Source of the DNA: Basidiobolus meristosporus CBS 931.73
Lineage: Eukaryota > Fungi > Basidiobolomycota
Assembly (NCBI GenBank): GCA_002104905.1
Contig: MCFE01000004.1
Span: forward strand, 186,001-250,000
Length of the DNA: 64,000 bases
Reading direction: 5' to 3'
Both the position numbers and the translations under genes were made by a program. Shown in pieces: positions 16,249-64,000 of this stretch. Within the stretch, counting starts at the first letter, position 1, and the number at the start of each line of letters is the position of its first letter. The notes beneath the pieces were generated by a model. It was not told where the DNA came from, made no database searches, and was given only the letters and a program-made list of their open reading frames with translations.

Positions 16249-19188
16249 ATGATCAGCATGGCTAATGGCATTGAGTTGAAAGCATATCCCGAAGAAATGT
16301 CTTTGGAGCCTGGGTACTATCATTTGTTCTTGATGCCTCCTTTATTTCTGCTAATCCTACCCAAATTTACAGATCAGAGATGAAAACCTTTACCGAATTT
16401 CCACAAACGAAAAATACTGTCGAATTGAATGTTGGTAGATCCTCGCCCATCACGCCTACCGATGTTGTATCCGAAGTATCACACACAAACGAGAACACTT
16501 CAGATAATTGCACTACTGAAGCCGACCAACCCGCACCGGTTGTAGAATCGGAGATCGCGGATGAGCCCATTGATTTTGTGGAGGTCAATGCGGATGAGCT
16601 GCCTGATCCTCTTGTCAATGATCATGCGCACGAAGACACACAGATGATTGACGCAGAACAACTGCCCACGACTACTACCGACAATAGCCTACCAGCTGAG
16701 GCCGAAAATCCCGACACCGCAGCTGAGCCTGAGGAAACACTAGCAGTGTCCACTGAAAAGGACTTGGAGAATAAGCCTTCAGCTGATGTTGCTACTGAGG
16801 AAACTCCCGCGCCTCCCTCCGAAATGGACTTCGAAAGTAAACCCTCAACCGAAGTCATTTCTGAAGAAGCCTCAGCGTTTCCTATCGACACGGACCTGGA
16901 AAATAAGTCCTCAACCGACGATATCCCCAAAGAAACTCCAGCCTGTCCCACCGAAGTGGACTTCGATAGTAAACCCTCAACCGAAGTTATTCCTGAGGAA
17001 GTCTCAGCGCCACCCACCGAGATGGACTTGGAAAGTAAGCCCTTGCCTGACGTTGTCGCCGAGGAAATTCCAGCGTTTTCTACCGAAACAAATGTGGAAA
17101 ATAAGCCCTCAACTGATGTTATTCACGACGAAAGCACCCTCGAAGCGCACAACTCGACCGAGCCTGCTTCCAATGTCGAGTCATCTTTAGCCGAAATGGA
17201 TATCGAGGCTGCTCCAGCCGCTACCAACGGTCACGAAAAAGCACCAGTAACCGAAGTTGTGGATATTGCACCAAAGGAGGAGAAGATTGCTACTACCTCG
17301 GCAGTTGATGAGGGGCGTCCTAGTAAAAGGCCCAACTACGATGAGCCTGCTGTGAAAAGATCTCACAAAATGTCACGACTGAGTGAAATCGAGCATGCTA
17401 AGGTATCCATAGTTGTGATGATTCCCTCGTACAAGCCGTTCTAACATGAATTTTACGTTACAGGCATTAGTCGGTACATTTGCATCTACGGCAGTCAGCC
17501 CACCTCGTCGGCCCAACATCACACGAGAACAGCTGAAATACTGTAGCGCCATACTCAAAGCGCTAAAAAGACATCGCGATGCTGGACCATTCCTGAAGCC
17601 AGTAGACCATGTCAAAATGCAGATCCCAGATTACCCTAAAATCGTTAAAACTCCCATGGATTTCAGTACCATTGAGAAAAAACTTAATAATAACCAATAC
17701 ATTACAGTTGATGATTTTGTTGCTGACGTTCGCCAAGTTTTCGAGAACTGTTATTTGTATAATGGTCGGGAATCTATTGTTTCTACTTTTGCACAAAACC
17801 TTGAAAAAGTTTTTAATAATCAACTACGGAAAATGCCACAAGCTACACCAAAGATTGTAGAGAGTACTAAAGATGAAAGTTTCAATGAAAGTAGGCCACG
17901 GTCTCGTCCTAGAAGTAACTCTAGAAGAAGTTCAACTGGATCTAAGGATAGACGGGAAAGCCAGTCTTCGATCACTTCGACGAAACGGGGAAGCTTGAAG
18001 AATCCACTGCCTGACGTCCATTACAAGTTTTGCATGTCTGTAATCAAGGAGTTCTTCAAGAAAACGCACTCTCACTACGCCTATCCGTTCTTGGAGCCGG
18101 TGGACTGGAAAAGCCTGGACATTCCCGATTATCTGACCATTATCAAGCACCCCATGGATGCCTCTACCATCAAAAGGAACCTGGAGAGCGGACTTTATTC
18201 CACACCCGAGGAGTTCGAAGCGGATGTGCGCCTGATGTTCAGAAACTGTTACAAGTACAATCCACCGAAGACCCCCGTATACACCATGGGCCAGACGTTG
18301 GAGAATATCTTCAACGCGAAGTGGGCGCAGAAGCCTTCTCTCCCTCCGCCAAAGGAGCCTACTCCTGAGCCAGAGCCTGAAGAGTTTTCCGAACAGGAGG
18401 AGTCGTCCGATGAGGAGGATGACAAGCACGCGCAGCAGATTGCCGAGCTTGAGCGCCATCTGGAGTTTATGTCCAAGCAGCTCGCCTCCATGAAGGGCGC
18501 GGCTCGTGAGAAGAAGAAGAAGGAGAAGGTGAAGACTCCGGTTAAGGCGAAGACCCAGGCATCCAAAGCGCCCAAGGGAACCAAGGCATCCAAATCCGCC
18601 AAAACCAAATCCACCCCGAAGCCCAGATCCCGCAAGGCTTCAGCACCCGAATACAGCACCGACGACGAGAAATATCCCGAGATAACCTTCGAACAGAAGC
18701 GTGAGCTGAGCGACAGCATCAATCTTCTCCCAGGCGAGAAGCTGAACACGGTCGTGTCCATCATTCATAGTAGTATGCCGCATCTGAAGGACACCTCGGG
18801 ACAGGAGGAGATCGAGTTGGATATCGATTCTCTCGACCACCGCACCCTGTACAAGTTGTACAAGTTCGTCCGCACCAATGTAGCTCCGAAGCGCGCCAAG
18901 CCTGCGCGCAAGAATTCCCGACCACACTTCTCCGAGGAGGAGCAAACACGCAAGATCCATGAGTTGGAGGAAAATCTCAGGAAATTTGAGTCGGCCGAGT
19001 CACACTCTTCTGGTAAGCATTTAATCGATTTCAACTAGAGAGGTTTGCAAGAATATATGCTAAGCAGTGATTTCATTTACGTAGTCAAAGCAGACAGGGT
19101 GGAAGATGACAACTCTGGGTCCTCCAGCAGCAGCAGCGGATCCTCCTCGTCGGGTTCGGATTCGGATAGCGGCAGCGAGAGTAACTGA
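16249..19188 (+). CDS. BDF1: BET-family double-bromodomain protein with ET domain (Bdf1-like), 4 exons
   Basis: BD1 AGPFLKPVD...PDYPKIVKTPMDFSTIEKKL...NCYLYN; BD2 AYPFLEPVDW...PDYLTIIKHPMDASTIK...NCYKYNP; ET domain ITFEQKRELSDSINLLPGEKL...EIELDIDSLD; Ser-rich tail ending TGA at 19188. Introns at about 16314-16372, 17403-17463 and near 19012-19085. Confidence 0.93.
16761..17130 (+). repeat. 66-bp (22-aa) coding tandem repeat, about 5.6 copies, in the BDF1 N-terminus
   Basis: DLENKPSADVATEETPAPPSEM / DFESKPSTEVISEEASAFPIDT / DLENKSSTDDIPKETPACPTEV / DFDSKPSTEVIPEEVSAPPTEM / DLESKPLPDVVAEEIPAFSTET / NVENKPSTDVIHDE; the first two units start at 16761 and 16827. Confidence 0.9.
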
Positions 19189-45079: not shown

Positions 45080-46048
45080 ATGACTTTTGACTCTGTTGAA
45101 GATTCGGGTTCCTCTGTCATGTCGACCCCCACCCTGCCCACACCTCCTGAATTCTCCGGAGAGCCTTTCTCCGCACTCTACCTATCCAAGGAATTCCCTC
45201 TGGCCACGTTCTCCACCGGTGCCAAAGCCCTCGAATCGAACAAGCCCCTCAGGGTCGAATGCCAGGCCAGAACTCGTATACCTACACCTTACGGGGAATT
45301 CTTCTTGCACCTGTACAAAAACAACCACGACTCCAAGGAGCATTTGGCCATAGTGTTCGGAGATGACATTAGAAGCACCACTTTAGACGCTGTCCAAGAA
45401 GGAGAAACGGAAATGGACCGGATCATTCGTGGAGCATACCAAGGCCGCTTGAATCCAAACAAAACCAATAACAGCTCCAAAGTATCAACCTCCTCCCCTC
45501 TGCCACCGCTTGTTCGGATCCATTCTGAATGCTTCACTGGTGAAACCGTTCATTCCGTTCGTTGCGATTGTGGAGACCAGCTGGCTGAGGCCATGCGCCT
45601 TATGCACGCCGAGGGCCGAGGTGTTGTTGTCTATCTTCGTCAAGAAGGGCGTGGCATCGGTTTGCTCGAGAAAATCAAGGCATACAACCTTCAGGACCTG
45701 GGATACGACACCGTCTCCGCCAACGTGGCCCTTTCCCATCCACCGGACCTTCGCACATATGATGTTGCTTGCGAGATCCTAAAGGACTTGAACTTGCCCA
45801 CCATCCGATTGTTGACCAACAACCCGGATAAAATCGAGCAACTTGAGAAGGGTGGGCTGAAGGTAACCGAAAGAGTACCCATGATACCCAAGGAATGGAC
45901 TGTGGAGCATGAGGTCCAAACAACGCACAAACGTAAAAGTGAGGAAAGCTACACCGAAGTAGACTCGTACCTCAAAACCAAAGTCGAGCGTATGAGGCAC
46001 TTGATTGACATTCCAACCCTTGCCTCGGCCGTCCCTGATACTTTATGA
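45080..46048 (+). CDS. RIB1: GTP cyclohydrolase II (riboflavin biosynthesis)
   Basis: [73 protein letters not shown]. Confidence 0.97.
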
Positions 46049-50781: not shown

Positions 50782-52356
50782 ATGGCGCCTGTTGAACTAA
50801 ACACCATTCAGCAACATAAAGATGACCTGGAGGAGCTGGGCGAGGATATTCTCCGAGCCAATCGTAAAGAGATTATGAACAGAACGCGGTTGCTTGAAAA
50901 CGACATCAAGGTAAGCCTTAGTGGTTTGTCGCTTCTTTGTATAGTAAATAAATGTTGTTCCAGGTCATGAAGAACGAGCATATGCGCCTACAACACGAAC
51001 AGACCTCCACCATGGAGCGCATCAAGGAAAACAAAGAGAAGATAAAGATGAACCTACAGCTACCATACCTCGTGGGAAACGTGGTCGAGGTAACTTGCAG
51101 CACTTCCTTCCTTCCCTTATCCATGAACACATTTTCACACAAGAGTGCAGATTATGGATATGATTCCAGATGACGACTCCGAGGAGGGTCAGAACGTTGA
51201 CTTGGATTCTCAGCGTAAAGGGAAATGCGCCGTGGTTAAAACGTCTACCAGACAAACCATTTTTCTACCACTAATTGGCCTGGTAGATAGCGATAAGCTA
51301 AAGCCTGGTGATCTGATTGGAATGAACAAGGATAGCTACTTAGTATTGGATACACTTCCAGCAGAGTATGTTTGTTTGCGCTGTCTTGGTTACCCATGAT
51401 GCATGTATTGATACAAGCCTAGGTATGACTCTCGAGTCAAAGCTATGGAGGTTGATGAGAAGCCTACAGAGGATTATACTGATATCGGTGGCTTGGATAA
51501 GCAGATCGAAGAGTTGGTCGAAGCAATTGTACTACCGATGACTCATGCAGAACGATTCAAGAATCTTGGAATTAAGCCACCGAAAGGTACATCCGCACTT
51601 TGTATAATCACTGGCCGAATTTTGCTTAACTCGTAGTTGCCATAGGTGTACTCATGTATGGACCACCAGGCACCGGGAAAACTCTACTGGCTAGAGCATG
51701 TGCCGCGCAGACCAACTCAACTTATCTAAAGCTTGCGGGTCCTCAGCTAGTCCAGGTAAGCGTGGTCATTGGGAGTGTTTCCGAGTAGCCAAGACTCAAA
51801 GTATGTTTAGATGTTCATCGGAGATGGTGCCAAGCTAGTTCGCGACGCATTTGACTTGGCCAAAGAGAAAGCGCCGACGATTATTTTCATCGATGAGCTG
51901 GACGCTATTGGTACCAAGCGTTTTGACAGCGAAAAAAGCGGCGACCGCGAGGTGCAAAGAACCATGCTGGAGTTGCTCAACCAATTGGATGGGTTCAGTA
52001 GCGACGAGAGAATCAAAGTGATCGCCGCCACAAACCGTATCGATATTCTTGATCCCGCCCTGCTACGTTCGGGCCGTCTTGATCGTAAAATTGAGTTTCC
52101 ACTTCCCACTGAAGAGGCCCGGGCTCGGATCTTACAAATCCATTCACGCAAGATGACCGTCTCCCCCGACATCAATTTTGAAGAGCTTGCGAGGTGTTGT
52201 GACGAATTCAACGGAGCCCAATGCAAGGCGGTTTGTGTGGAAGCTGGTATGCTCGCGCTTCGTAGAAGTGCCTCTGCACTCAGTCATGAGGACTTTATGG
52301 ACGGAATTCAAGAAGTCATCGCAAAGAAGAAGACTTCCCTAAAATACTTCGCCTAA
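50782..52356 (+). CDS. RPT5: 26S proteasome regulatory ATPase Rpt5 (PSMC3), multi-exon
   Basis: [86 protein letters not shown]. Confidence 0.97.
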
Positions 52357-52639
52357 TATCTGATGATCTTTCTACTCTTCCCCCACACCACCCCAAGCTC
52401 ATTGCATACCCCTCCATCCATTCTGTTAAATATACGCTTTCACCACCGTTGATCGCTTGACATCATGCATAAATTGAACTTTCGTTTTGAGCTATGGCCA
52501 GTGTCTCTTGATATTCGTGTGGTGCAGTGGTATCATATAGGAGTGAGTTGATGAACCGTGTGTAGCGTTCTATTATAAATAAATAGGGGGTCTAGTTTAT
52601 TTGTAATAAATAAAGATTATTAGGAATGCGTCGCTGTAT

Positions 52640-52921
52640 CTAACAAATAACACAACCGTAGTATCTAACACCACGTTTGCTCTTGCTGTGGTTGACCTTG
52701 AGCGGCTCCTCAGCGATCTTGTGCTCGTCTGTGTTCCATGAATCACGCACCTCCTTGCTGCTATCAAGAACCGTTGATACTGTCAACTTCTGAGAATCAT
52801 GCACCTCCTTGTTGTTATCAAATACTGTCAACTTCTGAGAATCAATGGGGTGTGAGGTTGTGGCAGATATAAGAACAGAGGCGATGCTCAGACATGCCAT
52901 TGCTTCGTTTCTAACTTTCAT
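52640..52921 (-). CDS. 93-aa putative secreted prepropeptide ending KR-GVRYYGCVIC
   Basis: ATG52921; signal-like MKVRNEAMACLSIASVLISATTS|HPI; codon-phased internal duplication; dibasic site; TATA-like CATAAAAG about 50 nt upstream; AT-rich 3' region with AATAAA on the minus strand. Confidence 0.6.
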   Translation of the reverse strand: MKVRNEAMACLSIASVLISATTSHPIDSQKLTVFDNNKEVHDSQKLTVSTVLDSSKEVRDSWNTDEHKIAEEPLKVNHSKSKRGVRYYGCVIC

Positions 52922-53101
52922 GATCAAGGGGGTGTGAATAAGTTTCAGTCGTGTGCCATGGGGCCATCTGGCTCTTTTATGTTTACCACTGTCAGATCAT
53001 TGACCTGCTTGTCGTCCCCAATCGAACCGAATTTGATTGTTCGCTCCCTTCCAGATAGCGGACAATGCACATCCCATATCGGGTTGATGTCTAGTTATAT
53101 C

Positions 53102-53206
53102 TCTAAGAGGGTGTTAAGGCCTTGTGCCACTTACATGGCATCTAAGAGAATATTATGGCTTTGTGCCTCTTGCAGGATATCTAAGAGCATATTACAGCCT
53201 TGCAGG
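53102..53206. repeat. 39-bp imperfect tandem repeat, about 2.7 copies, each starting TCTAAGAG
   Basis: Copies start at 53102, 53141 and 53180: tctaagagggtgttaaggccttgtgccac / tctaagagaatattatggctttgtgcctc / tctaagagcatattacagccttgcagg. Confidence 0.85.
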
Positions 53207-53259: not shown

Positions 53260-54799
53260 CTAGGCGTCTATGCTTGCAGGTTTCCTATTGGCAGTTAGCA
53301 TGTGCAGCAATACTCCTGTGGCCACACTCACATTCAACGAGTCTAGGAATGGGGCAATGGTAGGATTGGTGGAAGGGATGGAGACATGGATTTGGCAATT
53401 TTCACTAACAAGTTTACGAAGACCAAACCCTTCATTTCCCATCACCAGGATTCTGGGCCTGTCAATCATAGACATGGCAACCGGGTCTATAGACCGCTGG
53501 CCATCCGAGGTTCTCTCCGCAGACGCGCCGATGACCGTCCAACCGTTTTCTTGGGATTCCTTGAAGCAAGTGGGTCAATTCGGAGAATCGTCGGGGAAAT
53601 GGCAAGTAGCACCTACCCGCAGGAATTTCATCATGTTTTTCACACTGTACACATCCATAACCTCCAATGCGCCGGAACTTGCCTTGGACACGACCGGAGT
53701 CAACGGAGCACTTCGGGTGTTAGCAAAACATCAGAAAACAGCTCTTTATCACGAACACACGGAAAGTTCCCTACCTGTTCCTTGCGCAGAAAACAACGCC
53801 ATCAATGCCGAAGTAATAGGCGGACCTTAGGGGAAGATTAGCAAAGTAGCGGGCGCTCACAGTCGTACTCCACCCACCTCAGAATTGCTCCCAGATTTTG
53901 AGGATCGACCACCTGATCCAAAGCAAGCCAAATTGGTGATTGCTTACTCTCAAAAAGATATTCCCCGGAGCCAGATACGGCATGGTATCTAAGTGCATTC
54001 GGGGTTAAGCCCAGCCACGGCCACTTTTAATAAAGCAACTTACGATTTACCCTCCACTGCACTCAACCGGTTGATCGTATGAGGCTCCAAACGATCGGTC
54101 TTCAGCACCACTCCCTGGTAAAGGTGACTGTATGAATACAAAATACTGGGTTCAGCAGAGAGTTGGTAATTACCTGATGCGGTCTGTTTCCAGTATAGTC
54201 GTTTAGCTCTTTCCTGTCCATTTTCTGGATGGGCAGCTGTAGTTCCTCGGCTAATCCCAAAATCTTGTCGAGCTTATCACTGGGGGCACGACTCTTAGTA
54301 TGTAGTGTTTCCTCTAGATAGTATTGAATACTTACCTGTCTTCCTTTTTGGTGGTCTCGCTTTCACCCCTATAGAACAACCGATATGGAACCCGACGTTT
54401 GCTTTCGAGAGCAGGCAGTACCACCGAATAGCCGTACAACAAATCGCAATTCTTGTTGCTCGGTTCTCCCTGTCTTATACATTCACCCTGAAATTAACAA
54501 CCAAACTTGGAACCCCTCCGAGGAAACAAGTTCCGTACTTACTTCAAGCGCTTCATAAGTCTCGGCTCCTCCATCGCATCCCACACTCTGATATTCTTGG
54601 ACTTGTCGAATATGTCTTGAAGGTCAAACTCGGCGTCTTTAGTCGTCGTCGTCGTCGTCGCCGCATCTGCCCGAGCGGGCGATTTTTTCTTTGGATATTG
54701 GTTGACCCACTTTCCCTTCGAGGAGAATAGTCTGCAGAGCACACCACTGTTCCCCGTCCAAACTGGAGAGATAGCACGGCCGGGAATTCTTAGAAACAT
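53260..54799 (-). CDS. MRM1: Mitochondrial rRNA 2'-O-methyltransferase (SpoU/TrmH family), multi-exon
   Basis: Presequence MFLRIPGRA...RLFSS; LLYGYSVVLPALESKRR; ILVMGNEGFGLRK...DSLNVSVATGVLLH SPOUT motifs. Confidence 0.9.
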
Positions 54800-60768: not shown

Positions 60769-63700
60769 TTAACGATGAACACTTTCTTCATCATCAACCC
60801 AGATGCAGCGCCATCCTTTCGGTGTGAATTCCTCGCCTGAATCCCAACGACGCCATGCTTCCAGATAGCCCTTTTCCAAGTTTCGTACCCATCGGGGAGT
60901 GTCAAACAACGGTGAGCGATCTCGCTTAAGAAACAGGTCTTGACGGAGATCCATCAGAATGCCATGACCAACGCGGTAGTACGCTGGCTGTAGAATATTA
61001 CCTTGCAAAATACCCAGCGTTTGATGGGGCTGTTGTAGCTGAGGCACCTGATCGTCCGCAACGTATTCGTAGGTGAGGTCTTGGGCGTACTTTACAGCGA
61101 CATCCTCGTATTCCATTTCTGAAGCAACTACCATTTTGTCACCGTGTCCAGTGGCGATCGCTATGCTGGCTGCAACCCGAGAGCAAAGTTTATGATTATG
61201 TCGAGGATAGGTGAGAATAGGTGTTCCTGACCAAAGGATATCGCAGCCAGTTGTATGTCCATTGCACTCGGGTGTGTCCAAGAATAAGTCAGCAACACGT
61301 CCACGATGAATATGAACATTCTTGGGCGCAACGTCGGTAAAGATCACACGCGAAGCTACATCTTTGCCAGCATATTCCTCCGCAGTTCGAAGTAAATGTG
61401 CTTCACCTGCAGCGGGGAACCGAAGTAGCCACATGATGGAATTCGGAACACGGGATAAGATTCTTAACCAGACTTTGAATATTGATGGATCGATCTTGTA
61501 GAGTTGGTTAAAGTTGGCAAAGATCACCGTATCGTCAGATAAATTTGGGAACAGCTCACGTCGCATCGTCCAACGTTTTTTCTGCTCCAATTTCCAAATT
61601 AACTCCGGGTTGGCTTGTGTCGAAAGACCTGTTGATTTCATGTCCTCTTCATCCCTAAATCCTTGTCTGTGATCGTTAACGAAATATGAGTGCGGCATAT
61701 AAATCATTTTCTCCGTATAAACCCACTCCTCGCTAGCCTCCTCGGGGTCCATATCTCCCACGGCAATACCTTCAACCTCATGATTGTTGGTAATATGGCC
61801 ATCCTGTATCTGATAGTTGCTCAGGCCTTCCATATTATTCAGGTTCCTCCAGCGTTCGCAGGCCACTAATTCCGGTGGGCAAACAACTGGATCTGCAATC
61901 AGGTAATCGCACCAGCCAGCCCCGAGACTACCGGCGAACCCCATATAAGCCATAAGGATTGGTGCCGGTCTAGCGGCAAAAACTTCATTGCGCGCCCCTT
62001 TGGTATACCCGTTCAGATTAACCAGGATATGGATGCCATCCTGAACGATCTGTTCAACTATTGCTTGCGTGGTCCAGCTGGAAACATTCTGAAATACGTG
62101 GGCTTCTCGCTCGATTTTGGCTCGGTAGGGGGACTGATCGTTGGCTGTAGTGGCATAACAGTAAACCATGAACTTGTTAGGATCATGAAGACCGAACACT
62201 GACTGCATCAAGTGAGACAGCGGGTGATTGTTGAAATCAGAGGATACATATCCTATCTTGATCAAAGGCGAAGGAGGTGGCGGAGGTGGGTACACAGTTG
62301 CGGGTAGCCAGGAAGAGTTCAGTACGTTGTGCGAGATCCGAACGGCATTACGATGAGAAATTAGCCGAATTTGCCGAGGAGACAGTGGGTACGTAAAGGT
62401 ATGAAACGGAAGGACAGTTGGGGCAGATGGAGGACTCATGGAAGGGAGAATCGGTCTTTGGTACTCAAGGGTTGCTTCATTGTCGTTGATCCTGCGACCA
62501 TATTTATATTGGTCAAGATACCAACGCCTTTGGATATATCTCATGCACCGTTCAACAATTCGGATAAGCCAACTACCTTCGTTGCGGTGCACAGCCTCGT
62601 CTTGACGTCTCTCACGAGACACACGGCTTTCAAAAGTGCTCATGGAAAAAATCCAATCGTTGATTTTTGACTTCTGAGAGTCATCTAAAGGTTCGATTCC
62701 AAGTGCTTTAGAGACCATGGCAATGATAGTTCCATGTGGTGAATTATCTTTAAGCAGTATGCCGCGGCCCCACTCAAGTCCTTCAGTCAATTGTTTGTCA
62801 ACAATTCGACTAACTTTGTCCATCATCCATCCTGTAGAGTCGCTGGGGCGTTTCTTTTCGGATCGAACAAGAACTCCTTCAGCCCCCTTCTCTAGCTTAA
62901 CTACGCAATCTGCTGGTCCGCCTCGGCCTCTCCAATCGCAAACACCGCCTAACGCGTTCACTAGTCCGCAAATAGCTTCGCCAAAGTCAGGATTCACCTC
63001 TACTGCTCGCATATACCATTGAATACTATCCTGTACTCTACCGATATCTTTGACGGCATTTCCTAAATTGGCAAGAGCAATATCGAACCGAGGGTTACAT
63101 TCTACGGCTTTCTCGTACATGCGTATAGCATCTTGTAGACGTCCCATGTCCTTGAGTAAAGATCCGAGGTTCGTATACAGGTGAGGATGTCGAGAATCCA
63201 GAGTGAGGCCATAGGTGTAGTATTGATATGCTAATGCAGGCCCGTTCAATGGCATTGAACATTTAGGCGTAGGCGCTGGAGCTCCGACAGTACTTAGCAA
63301 TATCCCCAGGTTATTGCATGTTGAAGGAGACGGATAAAGTGAAAGGGAGAGATAATAAATAGGAAGCAATAGCTGTAATGGGGCAGGGCTGCCATTATCC
63401 TGGTACAACTTCGCCAACGTAAGTAGGATATTGGAACAGGTTTGGTTGGTTTGCTGCACACTAGAACTGGAAGGCGAATAGCCTGCTGCTTTTTTTTCGT
63501 ATCCACTGGCAAGTCCAGGGAGCATACCATCCGATTTAACGAATATAGATTTGCAAATTTGGACTGCCTGCTCAGGAATCAACAATAGCATTGGTAGTGA
63601 TCCAGGGTTACTTTGCTCCTCAGTAGACATCCCAGCAAGTCGGGCAATAGATGACACTACCTCAGCTAGAGTATGTCCGTCAAATACAATCTCTAACGCA

Positions 63701-64000
63701 CGCTCATACTCTTTTTTGGCACCAGGAGAGTCGCCCATCGCGTAGAGTAAGTTGCCTTTGGTGTAGAGAAGGTTTTGAATGCGAGGGGTGTGAACAGCCG
63801 CGATTCCTAAGTGTTTTGGTGATAAAGGAACACCTCGCTTGGCGTTCGAAAATACGTGAGACTCAACAAAAGTACAAACTTCCATTGCCTCAGTATAACG
63901 TGTTTGCTTGCTAGTTGCGGTTCGAGTATCTTTGCAATTCTGGCTACAAAGGACACCTAGAAGATTCTCCACGGCATCCCAGTAGCCTGGACGAAGTCGA
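60769..64000 (-). CDS. OGT: O-GlcNAc transferase-like protein (TPR + GT41), 5'-truncated by the window edge
   Basis: TPRs (HPHLYTNLGSLLKDMGRLQDAIRMYEKAV, FDIALANLGNAVKD); catalytic motifs IGYVSSDFNNHPLSHLM, NLNGYTKGAR, FANFNQLYKIDP, DLFLDTPECNGHTTGCDILWSGTP. The frame stays open to 64000 (LRPGYWDAVENLLG). Confidence 0.93.
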   Translation of the reverse strand, partial: RLRPGYWDAVENLLGVLCSQNCKDTRTATSKQTRYTEAMEVCTFVESHVFSNAKRGVPLSPKHLGIAAVHTPRIQNLLYTKGNLLYAMGDSPGAKKEYERALEIVFDGHTLAEVVSSIARLAGMSTEEQSNPGSLPMLLLIPEQAVQICKSIFVKSDGMLPGLASGYEKKAAGYSPSSSSVQQTNQTCSNILLTLAKLYQDNGSPAPLQLLLPIYYLSLSLYPSPSTCNNLGILLSTVGAPAPTPKCSMPLNGPALAYQYYTYGLTLDSRHPHLYTNLGSLLKDMGRLQDAIRMYEKAVECNPRFDIALANLGNAVKDIGRVQDSIQWYMRAVEVNPDFGEAICGLVNALGGVCDWRGRGGPADCVVKLEKGAEGVLVRSEKKRPSDSTGWMMDKVSRIVDKQLTEGLEWGRGILLKDNSPHGTIIAMVSKALGIEPLDDSQKSKINDWIFSMSTFESRVSRERRQDEAVHRNEGSWLIRIVERCMRYIQRRWYLDQYKYGRRINDNEATLEYQRPILPSMSPPSAPTVLPFHTFTYPLSPRQIRLISHRNAVRISHNVLNSSWLPATVYPPPPPPSPLIKIGYVSSDFNNHPLSHLMQSVFGLHDPNKFMVYCYATTANDQSPYRAKIEREAHVFQNVSSWTTQAIVEQIVQDGIHILVNLNGYTKGARNEVFAARPAPILMAYMGFAGSLGAGWCDYLIADPVVCPPELVACERWRNLNNMEGLSNYQIQDGHITNNHEVEGIAVGDMDPEEASEEWVYTEKMIYMPHSYFVNDHRQGFRDEEDMKSTGLSTQANPELIWKLEQKKRWTMRRELFPNLSDDTVIFANFNQLYKIDPSIFKVWLRILSRVPNSIMWLLRFPAAGEAHLLRTAEEYAGKDVASRVIFTDVAPKNVHIHRGRVADLFLDTPECNGHTTGCDILWSGTPILTYPRHNHKLCSRVAASIAIATGHGDKMVVASEMEYEDVAVKYAQDLTYEYVADDQVPQLQQPHQTLGILQGNILQPAYYRVGHGILMDLRQDLFLKRDRSPLFDTPRWVRNLEKGYLEAWRRWDSGEEFTPKGWRCIWVDDEESVHR

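What the first reader, a model, noticed from the sequence alone, without database searches (positions are those of the whole stretch)
52640..52921. Small secreted prepropeptide releasing a KR-flanked decapeptide GVRYYGCVIC with a CaaX-like end: a candidate peptide-pheromone or signal system
Seen in sequence: a 93-aa ORF with a signal-peptide-like N-terminus, an acidic repeated spacer, a single Lys-Arg site, and then only GVRYYGCVIC before the stop. Established knowledge: alpha-factor-type fungal pheromones use a signal peptide plus Kex2 (KR) processing. a-factor-type pheromones end in CaaX (e.g. CVIA), are farnesylated, and lack signal peptides. Hybrid precursors are known in some ascomycetes. 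Peptide pheromones are not the established mating signal in zygomycete-grade fungi (Mucorales use trisporoids). Inference: this precursor combines features of both classes and could encode an undescribed signalling or antimicrobial peptide. ER entry and cytosolic prenylation conflict, so CVIC may instead be a CxxC disulfide or metal-binding motif.
Basis: partly seen in the sequence, partly recalled or inferred. Interest (0 to 1): 0.8.

Follow-up and report, generated by a model that had tools for sequence, protein, structure and literature searches.

The report
Conserved Basidiobolus peptide-precursor gene family
The small reading frame is a real, mostly unannotated gene of the fungus Basidiobolus, one of at least five relatives that keep only an export-type leader and a short tail (RYYGC plus three residues); it is a testable candidate for a peptide or lipid-peptide signal in a fungal group where none is known.

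Summary
A 93-codon frame lies on the minus strand at 52921-52640 and ends KR-GVRYYGCVIC-stop. The genome is Basidiobolus meristosporus CBS 931.73, and its annotation calls no gene here.

B. ranarum has a copy in the same Rpt5/SpoU gap ending KR-GIRYYGCVIC. Three further copies lie in duplicated segments of both species. They form two old types: A ends KR-G[VI]RYYGCV[IV]C, and B ends R[RK]-[VI]RYYGC[AV]IL.

Only the 25-residue leader and the tail are conserved (dN 0.06-0.25). The spacer is unconstrained (dN above 0.8) and synonymous sites are at or near saturation. A TATA-like box and an AATAAA block are also conserved. This is therefore a translated gene under purifying selection.

The last Cys is Leu in type B. 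This weakens the CxxC-disulfide idea. The CaaX reading fits better, because Cys always sits at -4 with aliphatic a1 and a2 and X is Cys or Leu.

The leader looks like a signal peptide, so secretion and prenylation remain unresolved rivals. A pheromone role is untested. The scan also flagged this same stretch in another window (s1-202621), and a similar precursor on another piece of this genome (s1-222422).

The parts
52640..52921 (-). Complete single-exon coding sequence (93 codons plus TAG) of the type-A RYYGC precursor of B. meristosporus. It is unannotated in GCA_002104905.1.
   Evidence: sequence and translation; no gene is called between Rpt5 and SpoU; orthologue and paralogues; codon usage like real exons.
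52847..52921 (-). Conserved leader, residues 1-25 (MKVRNEAMACLSIASVLISATTSHP). It is signal-peptide-like, with a likely cut after ISA (residue 20). M1, K2, C10, S12, S15, T21 and P25 are invariant in the family.
   Evidence: invariant columns; hydrophobic core of 9-12 residues, and the 19-residue window is below membrane-span level; dN 0.18-0.23 against dS of 0.8 or more; blastn block 52859-52921 is 81% identical to B. ranarum.
52679..52846 (-). Variable spacer (pro-region), residues 26-81. It is rich in Ser/Thr/Asp/Glu, has no predicted fold and is unconstrained between species.
   Evidence: spacer dN 0.83-1.85, with 8 of 36 aligned residues identical to the orthologue. AlphaFold2 mean pLDDT 50 and no secondary structure; indels between members.
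52740..52844 (-). In-frame two-copy repeat inside the spacer (DSQKLTV...KEV[HR]DS). It is specific to B. meristosporus.
   Evidence: repeat families D2 and D3 with spacings of 54 and 45 nt; the repeat falls in a gap of the B. ranarum orthologue.
52673..52678 (-). Lys82-Arg83, a candidate kexin (Kex2-type) cleavage site. Arg83 is invariant in the family. Position 82 is K in type A and Q or P in type B, where the dibasic pair is shifted by one residue to RR or RK.
52643..52672 (-). C-terminal decapeptide GVRYYGCVIC. R86-Y-Y-G-C90 is invariant. The last four residues form a CaaX-type box, C-[VA]-[IV]-[CL], followed by the stop in all five members.
   Evidence: against the orthologue, 6 of the last 14 codons differ synonymously and only 2 differ conservatively; tail dN is 0.06.
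52971..52981 (-). TATA-like box CATAAAAGAGC, 60 nt upstream of the ATG.
   Evidence: the identical 11-mer lies at -72 in the B. ranarum orthologue. Related ATAAA[AG]GA motifs lie 50-72 nt upstream of the other three members. ATAAAAGA is the only 8-mer shared by three or more of the upstream regions.
52591..52619 (-). Conserved 3' block TAATCTTTATTTATTACAAATAAACTAGA, with AATAAA 39 nt after the stop. It is a likely polyadenylation signal. Its complement also carries AATAAA for the convergent Rpt5 gene.
   Evidence: the block is identical in the B. ranarum orthologue and near-identical in the second type-A copy. The blastn block 52591-52685 is one of only two sizeable alignable stretches in the whole 900-bp gap.

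Best explanation
This is a real protein-coding gene. It belongs to a Basidiobolus-restricted family with at least 2 copies in B. meristosporus and 3 in B. ranarum, in two ancient types. The genes encode prepropeptides of 81-103 residues.

The most likely mechanism has four steps:
1. The conserved, weakly hydrophobic leader takes the precursor into the ER and is cut near residue 20.
2. The disordered, freely evolving spacer acts as a pro-region.
3. A kexin-type protease cuts at the conserved basic site. This is KR or RR, or the invariant R-x-[VI]-R.
4. The strictly conserved 7-10-residue C-terminal peptide (...RYYGC plus three hydrophobic residues) is released as a short extracellular signalling peptide.

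Shown: the gene structure, the homologues, and selection on the leader and tail. Inferred: ER entry, cleavage and release. Speculative: the signalling role.

My odds are about 0.9 that the gene is real and translated, about 0.65 that it enters the secretory pathway, about 0.55 that it is cleaved at the basic site, and about 0.4 that it is a signal rather than some other activity.
For: - Orthologue in the same Rpt5/SpoU gap of B. ranarum (E 3e-18) and three paralogues in duplicated segments.
- Selection pattern: leader dN 0.18-0.23, tail dN 0.06-0.25, spacer dN 0.83 or more. dN/dS is about 0.1 on the leader plus tail, with dS of 1.4-2.2.
- In the 900-bp orthologous gap, only the ORF ends, the TATA-like box and the AATAAA block align.
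- Codon usage matches real exons.
- The leader has a basic n-region, a 9-12-residue hydrophobic core and a polar c-region with Pro, Ser, Thr and Ala. The core is too short for a membrane span.
- No fold is predicted, as expected for a propeptide.
- The conserved-leader, variable-spacer, conserved-C-terminal-peptide layout is the standard design of secreted peptide-signal precursors. An example is Cryptococcus Qsp1, which is secreted as a pro-peptide (PMC7537855).
- B. meristosporus is reported as the fungal strain richest in Kex2-processed repeat proteins, so kexin processing is heavily used there (PMC7329392).
Against: - The JGI/NCBI annotation calls no gene here, and only 1 of 5 members is annotated.
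- No signal-peptide predictor was available.
- One member has RK, a poor Kex2 site.
- Type-B peptides would carry a single unpaired Cys, which is unusual for secreted peptides.
- The C-terminus behaves like a CaaX box: Cys is always at -4, a1 and a2 are aliphatic, X is Cys or Leu, and 3-4 basic residues lie just upstream. That pattern points to cytosolic prenylation, which the plain secretory model leaves unexplained.
- An invariant Cys10 inside the leader is also unexplained.
Confidence: 0.5

Rival explanations
1. Prenylated lipopeptide, similar to a-factor or basidiomycete pheromones. In this model the C-terminal C-a-a-X is farnesylated in type A (CVIC, CVVC) or geranylgeranylated in type B (CAIL, CVIL). 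The aaX residues are then trimmed and the Cys is methyl-esterified. The N-terminal part is removed at the basic site, giving G[VI]RYYGC(prenyl)-OMe or [VI]RYYGC(prenyl)-OMe.

There are two ways to reconcile this with the leader. Either the conserved N-terminus is not a functional ER signal, or this short precursor is modified in the cytosol before it is translocated post-translationally.
For: - In all five members the invariant Cys sits exactly four residues from the stop. a1 is V or A, a2 is I or V, and X switches between Cys and Leu across the two ancient types. That fits CaaX rules and does not fit a CxxC disulfide.
- CVIL is used as a GGTase-I reporter sequence in yeast (plasmid list in the supplement of PMC11304957).
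- Isoleucine at a2 is a positive determinant in the Ras-based screen (PMC10320760).
- From my own knowledge: yeast Ras1 ends CIIC and G-gamma-2 ends CAIL.
- Three to four basic residues lie in the 10 residues before the Cys.
- Small presecretory proteins are completed in the cytosol and imported post-translationally (PMC5946456, PMC3793985), so the conflict is not absolute.
- STE3-type receptors are reported as the one GPCR family generally conserved across fungi (bioRxiv 10.1101/546531).
Against: - The leader has the anatomy of a cleavable signal peptide and is itself conserved.
- Known lipopeptide pheromone precursors, including the h-type HPP1, lack a signal sequence.
- I know of no precedent for a prenylated peptide that carries an ER leader.
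- The predicted mature lipopeptide of 6-7 residues is shorter than known ones.
- No prenylation predictor was run, and no search of the proteome for receptor or exporter was possible.
Confidence: 0.25
2. A small membrane-tethered protein that is not released. The N-terminal hydrophobic segment and a polybasic-CaaX tail, like the tails of Ras and Rho GTPases, hold a disordered linker on a membrane. The basic residues serve membrane binding, not proteolysis.
For: - Both ends are conserved and the middle is not.
- A basic cluster lies directly before the CaaX-type box.
- Cys10 in the hydrophobic segment is invariant and could be acylated. That last point is inference.
Against: - The hydrophobic core has only 9-12 residues and is followed by a Pro/Ser/Thr c-region typical of cleaved signals.
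- A freely evolving, indel-rich linker with no fold offers no functional domain to tether.
- The invariant RYYG next to the Cys looks like a recognised ligand rather than a generic polybasic stretch.
Confidence: 0.1
3. A defence product: an antimicrobial or toxic peptide, or the core of a ribosomally made, modified peptide (for example one with Tyr or Cys cross-links), rather than a signal.
For: - Earlier unchecked notes from this scan describe many amplified families of secreted prepro-peptides with Gly/Tyr/Arg-rich cores and Cys-containing ends in this genome.
- The Tyr-Tyr-Gly-Cys motif could be a cross-linking site. This is inference.
Against: - The released peptide would have only 7-10 residues and a net charge of +1 to +3.
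- It is strictly conserved across species instead of diversifying, and is present in 2-3 copies rather than large arrays.
- The neighbours are housekeeping genes in conserved synteny. No DUF3328/UstYa, tyrosinase, P450 or methyltransferase of a RiPP cluster was found.
Confidence: 0.1
4. A chance ORF or non-coding element in an intergenic gap, such as a conserved 3' regulatory region of the flanking genes.
For: - There is no gene model in the reference annotation.
- No protein homologue was found by database searches.
Against: - Five intact ORFs exist in two species.
- Many synonymous differences are found, yet the amino acids at both ends are conserved.
- A copy is retained in a duplicated segment that has lost the flanking Rpt5 and SpoU genes.
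- A conserved TATA-like box and an AATAAA block are correctly placed for this strand.
- Codon usage is like that of exons.
Confidence: 0.03

Closest known systems
a-factor / basidiomycete-type lipopeptide pheromone precursors (S. cerevisiae MFA1/2, Ustilago Mfa1/2, Cryptococcus MFalpha)
   Same: Both are short precursors whose only conserved product lies at the extreme C-terminus and ends in Cys-aliphatic-aliphatic-X. Aromatic residues lie next to the Cys. Several paralogous types sit in one genome.
   Different: This family carries a conserved leader that looks like a signal peptide, and a dibasic site directly before the peptide. The precursor is longer (81-103 aa). There is no sequence homology. 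Prenylation is untested.
h-type (hybrid) pheromone precursor HPP1 of Trichoderma reesei and Fusarium (PMC3068285)
   Same: Both combine Kex2-type basic sites with a C-terminal CaaX box.
   Different: HPP1 has three copies of its motif and no predicted signal sequence. This family has one copy and a leader. HPP1 belongs to Hypocreales and this family to Basidiobolus, and there is no homology.
alpha-factor-type precursors and Kex2-processed repeat proteins (KEPs; PMC6339444, PMC7329392)
   Same: Both have a signal-type leader, a pro-region and a basic processing site ahead of a short peptide. B. meristosporus is very rich in KEPs.
   Different: KEPs are defined by at least three repeats of the peptide separated by Kex2 sites. 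This family has a single C-terminal copy, no STE13 (X-Ala or X-Pro) dipeptides, and an ending like a prenylation box.
Cryptococcus neoformans Qsp1 quorum-sensing peptide (PMC7537855)
   Same: It is a fungal signal made from a small secreted pro-peptide that yields one short mature peptide. It acts in density sensing and mating. This is the best functional analogue for the secretory model.
   Different: Qsp1 is matured outside the cell by the wall protease Pqp1 and imported through Opt1. It has no CaaX-like end, and there is no sequence similarity.
Polybasic-CaaX tails of Ras/Rho GTPases
   Same: Both have a basic cluster followed by C-a-a-X, with X being Cys or Leu.
   Different: This family has no GTPase or other folded domain, and it has an N-terminal leader.

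Membership tests
a-factor-type lipopeptide pheromone precursors | C-terminal CaaX box (Cys at -4, aliphatic a1 and a2) | tested here: met
   The five members end CVIC, CVIC, CVVC, CAIL and CVIL. This is a sequence-level test only.
a-factor-type lipopeptide pheromone precursors | No ER signal peptide; export by an ABC transporter | tested here: inconclusive
   The leader has signal-peptide anatomy by a hydropathy heuristic. SignalP was not available. The exporter was not searched for.
a-factor-type lipopeptide pheromone precursors | Farnesylated, carboxymethylated mature peptide sensed by a Ste3-type receptor | not testable with these tools
   This needs mass spectrometry and genetics. The only support is a literature statement that STE3-like GPCRs are general in fungi.
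h-type hybrid pheromone precursors (HPP1) | [quoted passage not shown] | tested here: not met
   There is one RYYGC motif per protein. The definition is from PMC3068285.
alpha-factor type / KEP | At least three tandem peptide repeats separated by KR, RR or KK sites | tested here: not met
   There is a single basic site and a single peptide copy. The internal repeat in the window's ORF is not flanked by basic sites. The definition is from PMC6339444.
alpha-factor type / KEP | N-terminal signal peptide | tested here: inconclusive
   The heuristic is positive in all five members. No dedicated predictor was run.
Dikaritin-type fungal RiPP precursors (ustiloxin class) | Repeated core peptides plus neighbouring DUF3328/UstYa and tailoring genes | tested here: not met
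   The neighbours are Nfs1, Rpt5, SpoU methylase, EMP24 and mitochondrial S10, in conserved synteny.
Kex2-processed pro-domain (K2PP) effectors | A folded, usually Cys-rich mature domain after the KR site | tested here: not met
   Only 9-10 residues follow the basic site, and no fold is predicted.
Any Pfam or known protein family | Significant profile or sequence match | tested here: not met
   Pfam gives nothing for any of the five members. The word search gives nothing. The exhaustive HMMER search gives one repeat-inflated bacterial adhesin hit. The Atlas best score is 0.79.

The most novel reading that the evidence does not exclude
Basidiobolus uses ribosomal peptide pheromones of a new class. 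The precursors carry both an ER-type leader and a functional CaaX box. They occur in two anciently separated types: A, with X = Cys (farnesyl-type), and B, with X = Leu (geranylgeranyl-type). These could act as complementary lipopeptide signals during zygospore formation in this self-fertile fungus. That would be the first peptide mating or cell-cell signal system in a zygomycete-grade lineage, and the first prenylated peptide made from a leader-bearing precursor.
Probability: 0.13. Interest if true: 0.9.

Novelty: new variant of a known kind. Interest (0 to 1): 0.66.

Why it matters
Peptide pheromones are established only in Dikarya. For zygomycete-grade fungi the known sexual signals are trisporoids in Mucorales, and the literature I could search reports nothing for Basidiobolus.

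This work gives a conserved gene family under clear purifying selection, with defined candidate products of 6-10 residues in two types. These peptides can be synthesised, looked for by mass spectrometry and assayed directly.

The family also poses a sharp cell-biological question: can a precursor with a signal-type leader use a CaaX box? It further shows that reference annotations of both Basidiobolus genomes miss four of the five members of a selected small-gene family.

Tried and rejected
- **Paralogue in the window:** none found by tblastn or by a scan for ORFs ending C-x-x-x.
- **Word-index protein search of the ORF:** nothing found.
- **Exhaustive HMMER search:** the single hit, P0122, is a 2161-aa bacterial cadherin/RTX-type repeat protein. 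The match is 11 weak repeats of about 33% identity to the Ser/Thr/Asp-rich spacer, so I rejected it as inflated by composition and repeats.
- **ESM Atlas:** best score 0.79, below the useful level.
- **Rfam and tRNA scans of the window:** empty, so the gap holds no known RNA gene.
- **Rpt5 last exon as bait:** the best hits were 92% identical (Entrophospora and a metagenome contig). Their loci L001-L006 have neither synteny nor an ORF relative. This was a detour caused by the length filter hiding the full-length Basidiobolus Rpt5.
- **JGI metagenome scan with the family alignment:** 87 pattern matches, none confirmed.
- **CxxC disulfide or metal site:** set aside because type B ends in Leu.
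- **KEP, h-type, K2PP and dikaritin membership:** each fails a defining feature.
- **Bacterial-type promoter/terminator scan:** irrelevant for a fungus.
- **Supplement look-up for CVIC, CVVC and CVIL in the yeast CXXX screens:** the stored tables are cut after the CA... rows, so only CAIL and CAIC neighbours were visible and their columns are not clearly labelled. I did not use them as evidence.
- **Spliced models:** the neighbouring spliced genes (Rpt5, SpoU) were searched by single exons only.

Full report
**Observation.** It has one Lys-Arg. It also has an in-frame two-copy repeat in the middle, with spacings of 54 and 45 nt. Its N-terminus has a basic start and a 9-12-residue hydrophobic core (Kyte-Doolittle 2.4-2.6). 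The 19-residue window scores only 1.35, which is like a signal peptide and too short for a membrane span.

The ORF lies in a 900-bp gap between two convergent genes. One is the last exon of the proteasome ATPase Rpt5 (plus strand, stop at 52356). The other is the last exon of a SpoU-type methyltransferase (minus strand, stop at 53260).

**Organism and annotation.** The single-exon GTP cyclohydrolase II gene of the window (45080-46045) is an exact match to a protein on MCFE01000004.1 of GCA_002104905.1. A paralogue on another contig of that assembly is named Basidiobolus meristosporus CBS 931.73 by NCBI. NCBI places the species in phylum Basidiobolomycota. In that annotation nothing is called between Rpt5 and SpoU, so the ORF is unannotated.

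The rest of the window is housekeeping: Nup98-96, a BET bromodomain protein, tubulin, a ClpB-like ATPase, Nfs1, mitochondrial S10 and O-GlcNAc transferase. There are no RiPP-tailoring genes, receptor genes or exporter genes near the ORF.

**Database searches on the ORF itself were blank or spurious.**
- Pfam gave nothing.
- The word-index search gave nothing.
- The ESM Atlas gave nothing useful.
- The exhaustive HMMER search gave one hit, a bacterial 2161-aa cadherin/RTX repeat protein. Its 11 repeats each match the Ser/Thr/Asp-rich spacer weakly. I regard this as an artefact of composition and repeats.

**Synteny gave the decisive result.** I used the cyclohydrolase as bait and fetched three loci:
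- the B. ranarum orthologous locus (L008, fully collinear);
- a second B. ranarum segment (L010);
- a paralogous B. meristosporus segment (L009).

tblastn with the 93-aa ORF found one copy in L008, in the same Rpt5/SpoU gap and on the same strand (E 3e-18), ending KR-GIRYYGCVIC. It found two tandem copies in L010 just downstream of the Rpt5 paralogue, ending KR-GIRYYGCVVC and PRK-IRYYGCVIL. It found one copy in L009 ending QRR-VRYYGCAIL. L009 has lost the Rpt5 and SpoU paralogues but kept the small gene. Only the 102-aa L010 copy is annotated, as KAK9763919.1, a hypothetical protein.

The alignment (A1) has these invariant residues: M1, K2, C10, S12, S15, T21, P25, R83, R86, Y87, Y88, G89 and C90. 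There are two types, each present in both species. Type A ends KR-G[VI]RYYGCV[IV]C. Type B ends R[RK]-[VI]RYYGC[AV]IL.

**Selection.**
- Between orthologues, the leader has dN of 0.18-0.23 and the tail has dN of 0.06-0.25. The spacer has dN of 0.83-1.85.
- Synonymous sites are near or beyond saturation.
- On the leader plus tail, dN/dS is about 0.1 with dS of 1.4-2.2.
- In the last 14 codons of the window gene against its orthologue, six codons differ synonymously and two differ conservatively (Ser/Asn and Val/Ile).

The blocks were chosen because they align, which biases dN downward. Even so, the abundance of silent differences shows that the conservation is at the protein level.

**DNA-level conservation.** The orthologous gaps align only over four stretches: the N-terminal codons, the C-terminal codons plus a 3' block containing AATAAA (39 nt after the stop), and an 11-nt TATA-like box, CATAAAAGAGC, at -60 and -72. 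The other three genes have similar ATAAA[AG]GA boxes 50-72 nt upstream. Codon usage of the window ORF equals that of real exons and beats 95% of shadow ORFs. AlphaFold2 finds no fold (pLDDT 50). I conclude that this is a translated single-exon gene whose functional parts are the leader and the C-terminal peptide.

**Mechanism.** A conserved leader, an unconstrained spacer and a conserved C-terminal peptide after a basic site make up the standard design of secreted peptide-signal precursors. The leader has the n, h and c regions of a cleavable signal. B. meristosporus is reported as the fungus richest in Kex2-processed repeat proteins (PMC7329392).

My best single model is therefore ER entry, kexin cleavage at KR or RR (or at the invariant R-x-[VI]-R), and release of a 7-10-residue peptide. 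Strict conservation and small size fit a receptor-recognised signal better than an antimicrobial peptide. Cryptococcus Qsp1, which is secreted as a pro-peptide and acts in density sensing and mating, is the nearest functional analogue (PMC7537855).

**The family data change the reading of the C-terminus.**
- The invariant feature is a Cys exactly four residues from the stop, with a1 = V or A, a2 = I or V, and X = Cys or Leu. That is the grammar of a CaaX box.
- X = Leu is the classical geranylgeranyl signal. CVIL is used as a GGTase-I reporter (PMC11304957 supplement).
- Ile at a2 is a positive determinant for full CaaX processing (PMC10320760).
- From my own knowledge, yeast Ras1 ends CIIC and G-gamma-2 ends CAIL.
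- Three to four basic residues precede the Cys.

The conflict between ER entry and cytosolic prenylation is real but not absolute. Small presecretory proteins are finished in the cytosol and imported post-translationally (PMC5946456, PMC3793985). I therefore keep a prenylated-lipopeptide model at about 0.25 and a membrane-tethered small-protein model at about 0.1. The invariant Cys10 in the leader is unexplained by any model.

**Comparison with known classes.**
- It is not a KEP or alpha-factor-type precursor, because it has a single peptide copy (definition in PMC6339444).
- It is not an h-type HPP1 precursor, which has three motif copies and no signal sequence (PMC3068285).
- It is not a K2PP effector, because there is no folded mature domain.
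- It is not a dikaritin precursor, because there are no repeats and no cluster.
- It shares the CaaX end with a-factor-type precursors but carries a leader.
- No relative was found outside Basidiobolus, in Pfam, in two protein searches or in JGI metagenomes. These searches have limited power for an 80-100-aa protein with only about 35 conserved residues.
- Searches of the held literature found no report of a peptide pheromone in Basidiobolus.

**History.** Both types occur in both species. They lie in tandem in L010 but singly in the window (A) and in L009 (B). This suggests an ancestral A+B pair downstream of Rpt5 that predates both the segmental duplication and the split of the two species, followed by differential loss.

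**Limits.**
- There is no expression, secretion, cleavage or lipidation evidence.
- No SignalP or PrePS run was possible.
- An independent first-reader note (s1-222422) describes a 'signal-like leader, dibasic site and CAAX end' elsewhere in this genome. It may be the L009 copy or a further member, and I could not check which.

**Verdict.** The function and the processing route remain open.

Noticed in passing
window 53102-53202: A 39-nt tandem repeat (2.6 copies, 77% matches) lies between the SpoU stop codon and the TATA-like box of the peptide gene. It is not among the blocks that align with B. ranarum. It could be a minisatellite or a promoter or 3'UTR element.
   Followed up: partly
window 52591-52619; L008 and L010 equivalents: The 29-nt block TAATCTTTATTTATTACAAATAAACTAGA is identical between the two species although synonymous sites are saturated. 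It carries AATAAA on both strands, so it may act as a shared bidirectional polyadenylation or termination element for the convergent Rpt5 and peptide genes. The second type-A copy keeps it even without Rpt5 downstream.
   Followed up: partly
window ~40000-64000 versus L009 (MCFE01000040.1) and L008/L010 (B. ranarum): Both Basidiobolus species carry paralogous collinear segments (ClpB-like, GTP cyclohydrolase II, Nfs1 ... OGT) with differential gene loss. The cyclohydrolase paralogues within B. meristosporus are 79% identical, while the B. ranarum orthologue is 83% identical. This suggests a large-scale duplication older than the species split.
   Followed up: partly
window 52922-52966 (upstream of the ATG, minus strand): Two out-of-frame ATGs lie at -46 and -38, between the TATA-like box and the start codon. 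The first would open a short upstream ORF overlapping the start. Whether they are in the mRNA depends on the transcription start, which could not be mapped.
   Followed up: no
window 60769-63972 (-): A long exon encodes a TPR plus GT41 O-GlcNAc transferase. L009 holds a paralogue.
   Followed up: no
window 16380-17444 and 17446-19038 (+): Two long ORFs abut in different frames. The second encodes a double-bromodomain BET protein. They are probably one gene split by an intron or a frame change.
   Followed up: no
L010 6823-8037: In B. ranarum the type-B gene (annotated) and a type-A gene (unannotated) sit head-to-tail 630 bp apart. Their tblastn score with each other (51 bits) is higher than other A-B pairs (30-39 bits). 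This hints at gene conversion between the tandem copies.
   Followed up: no
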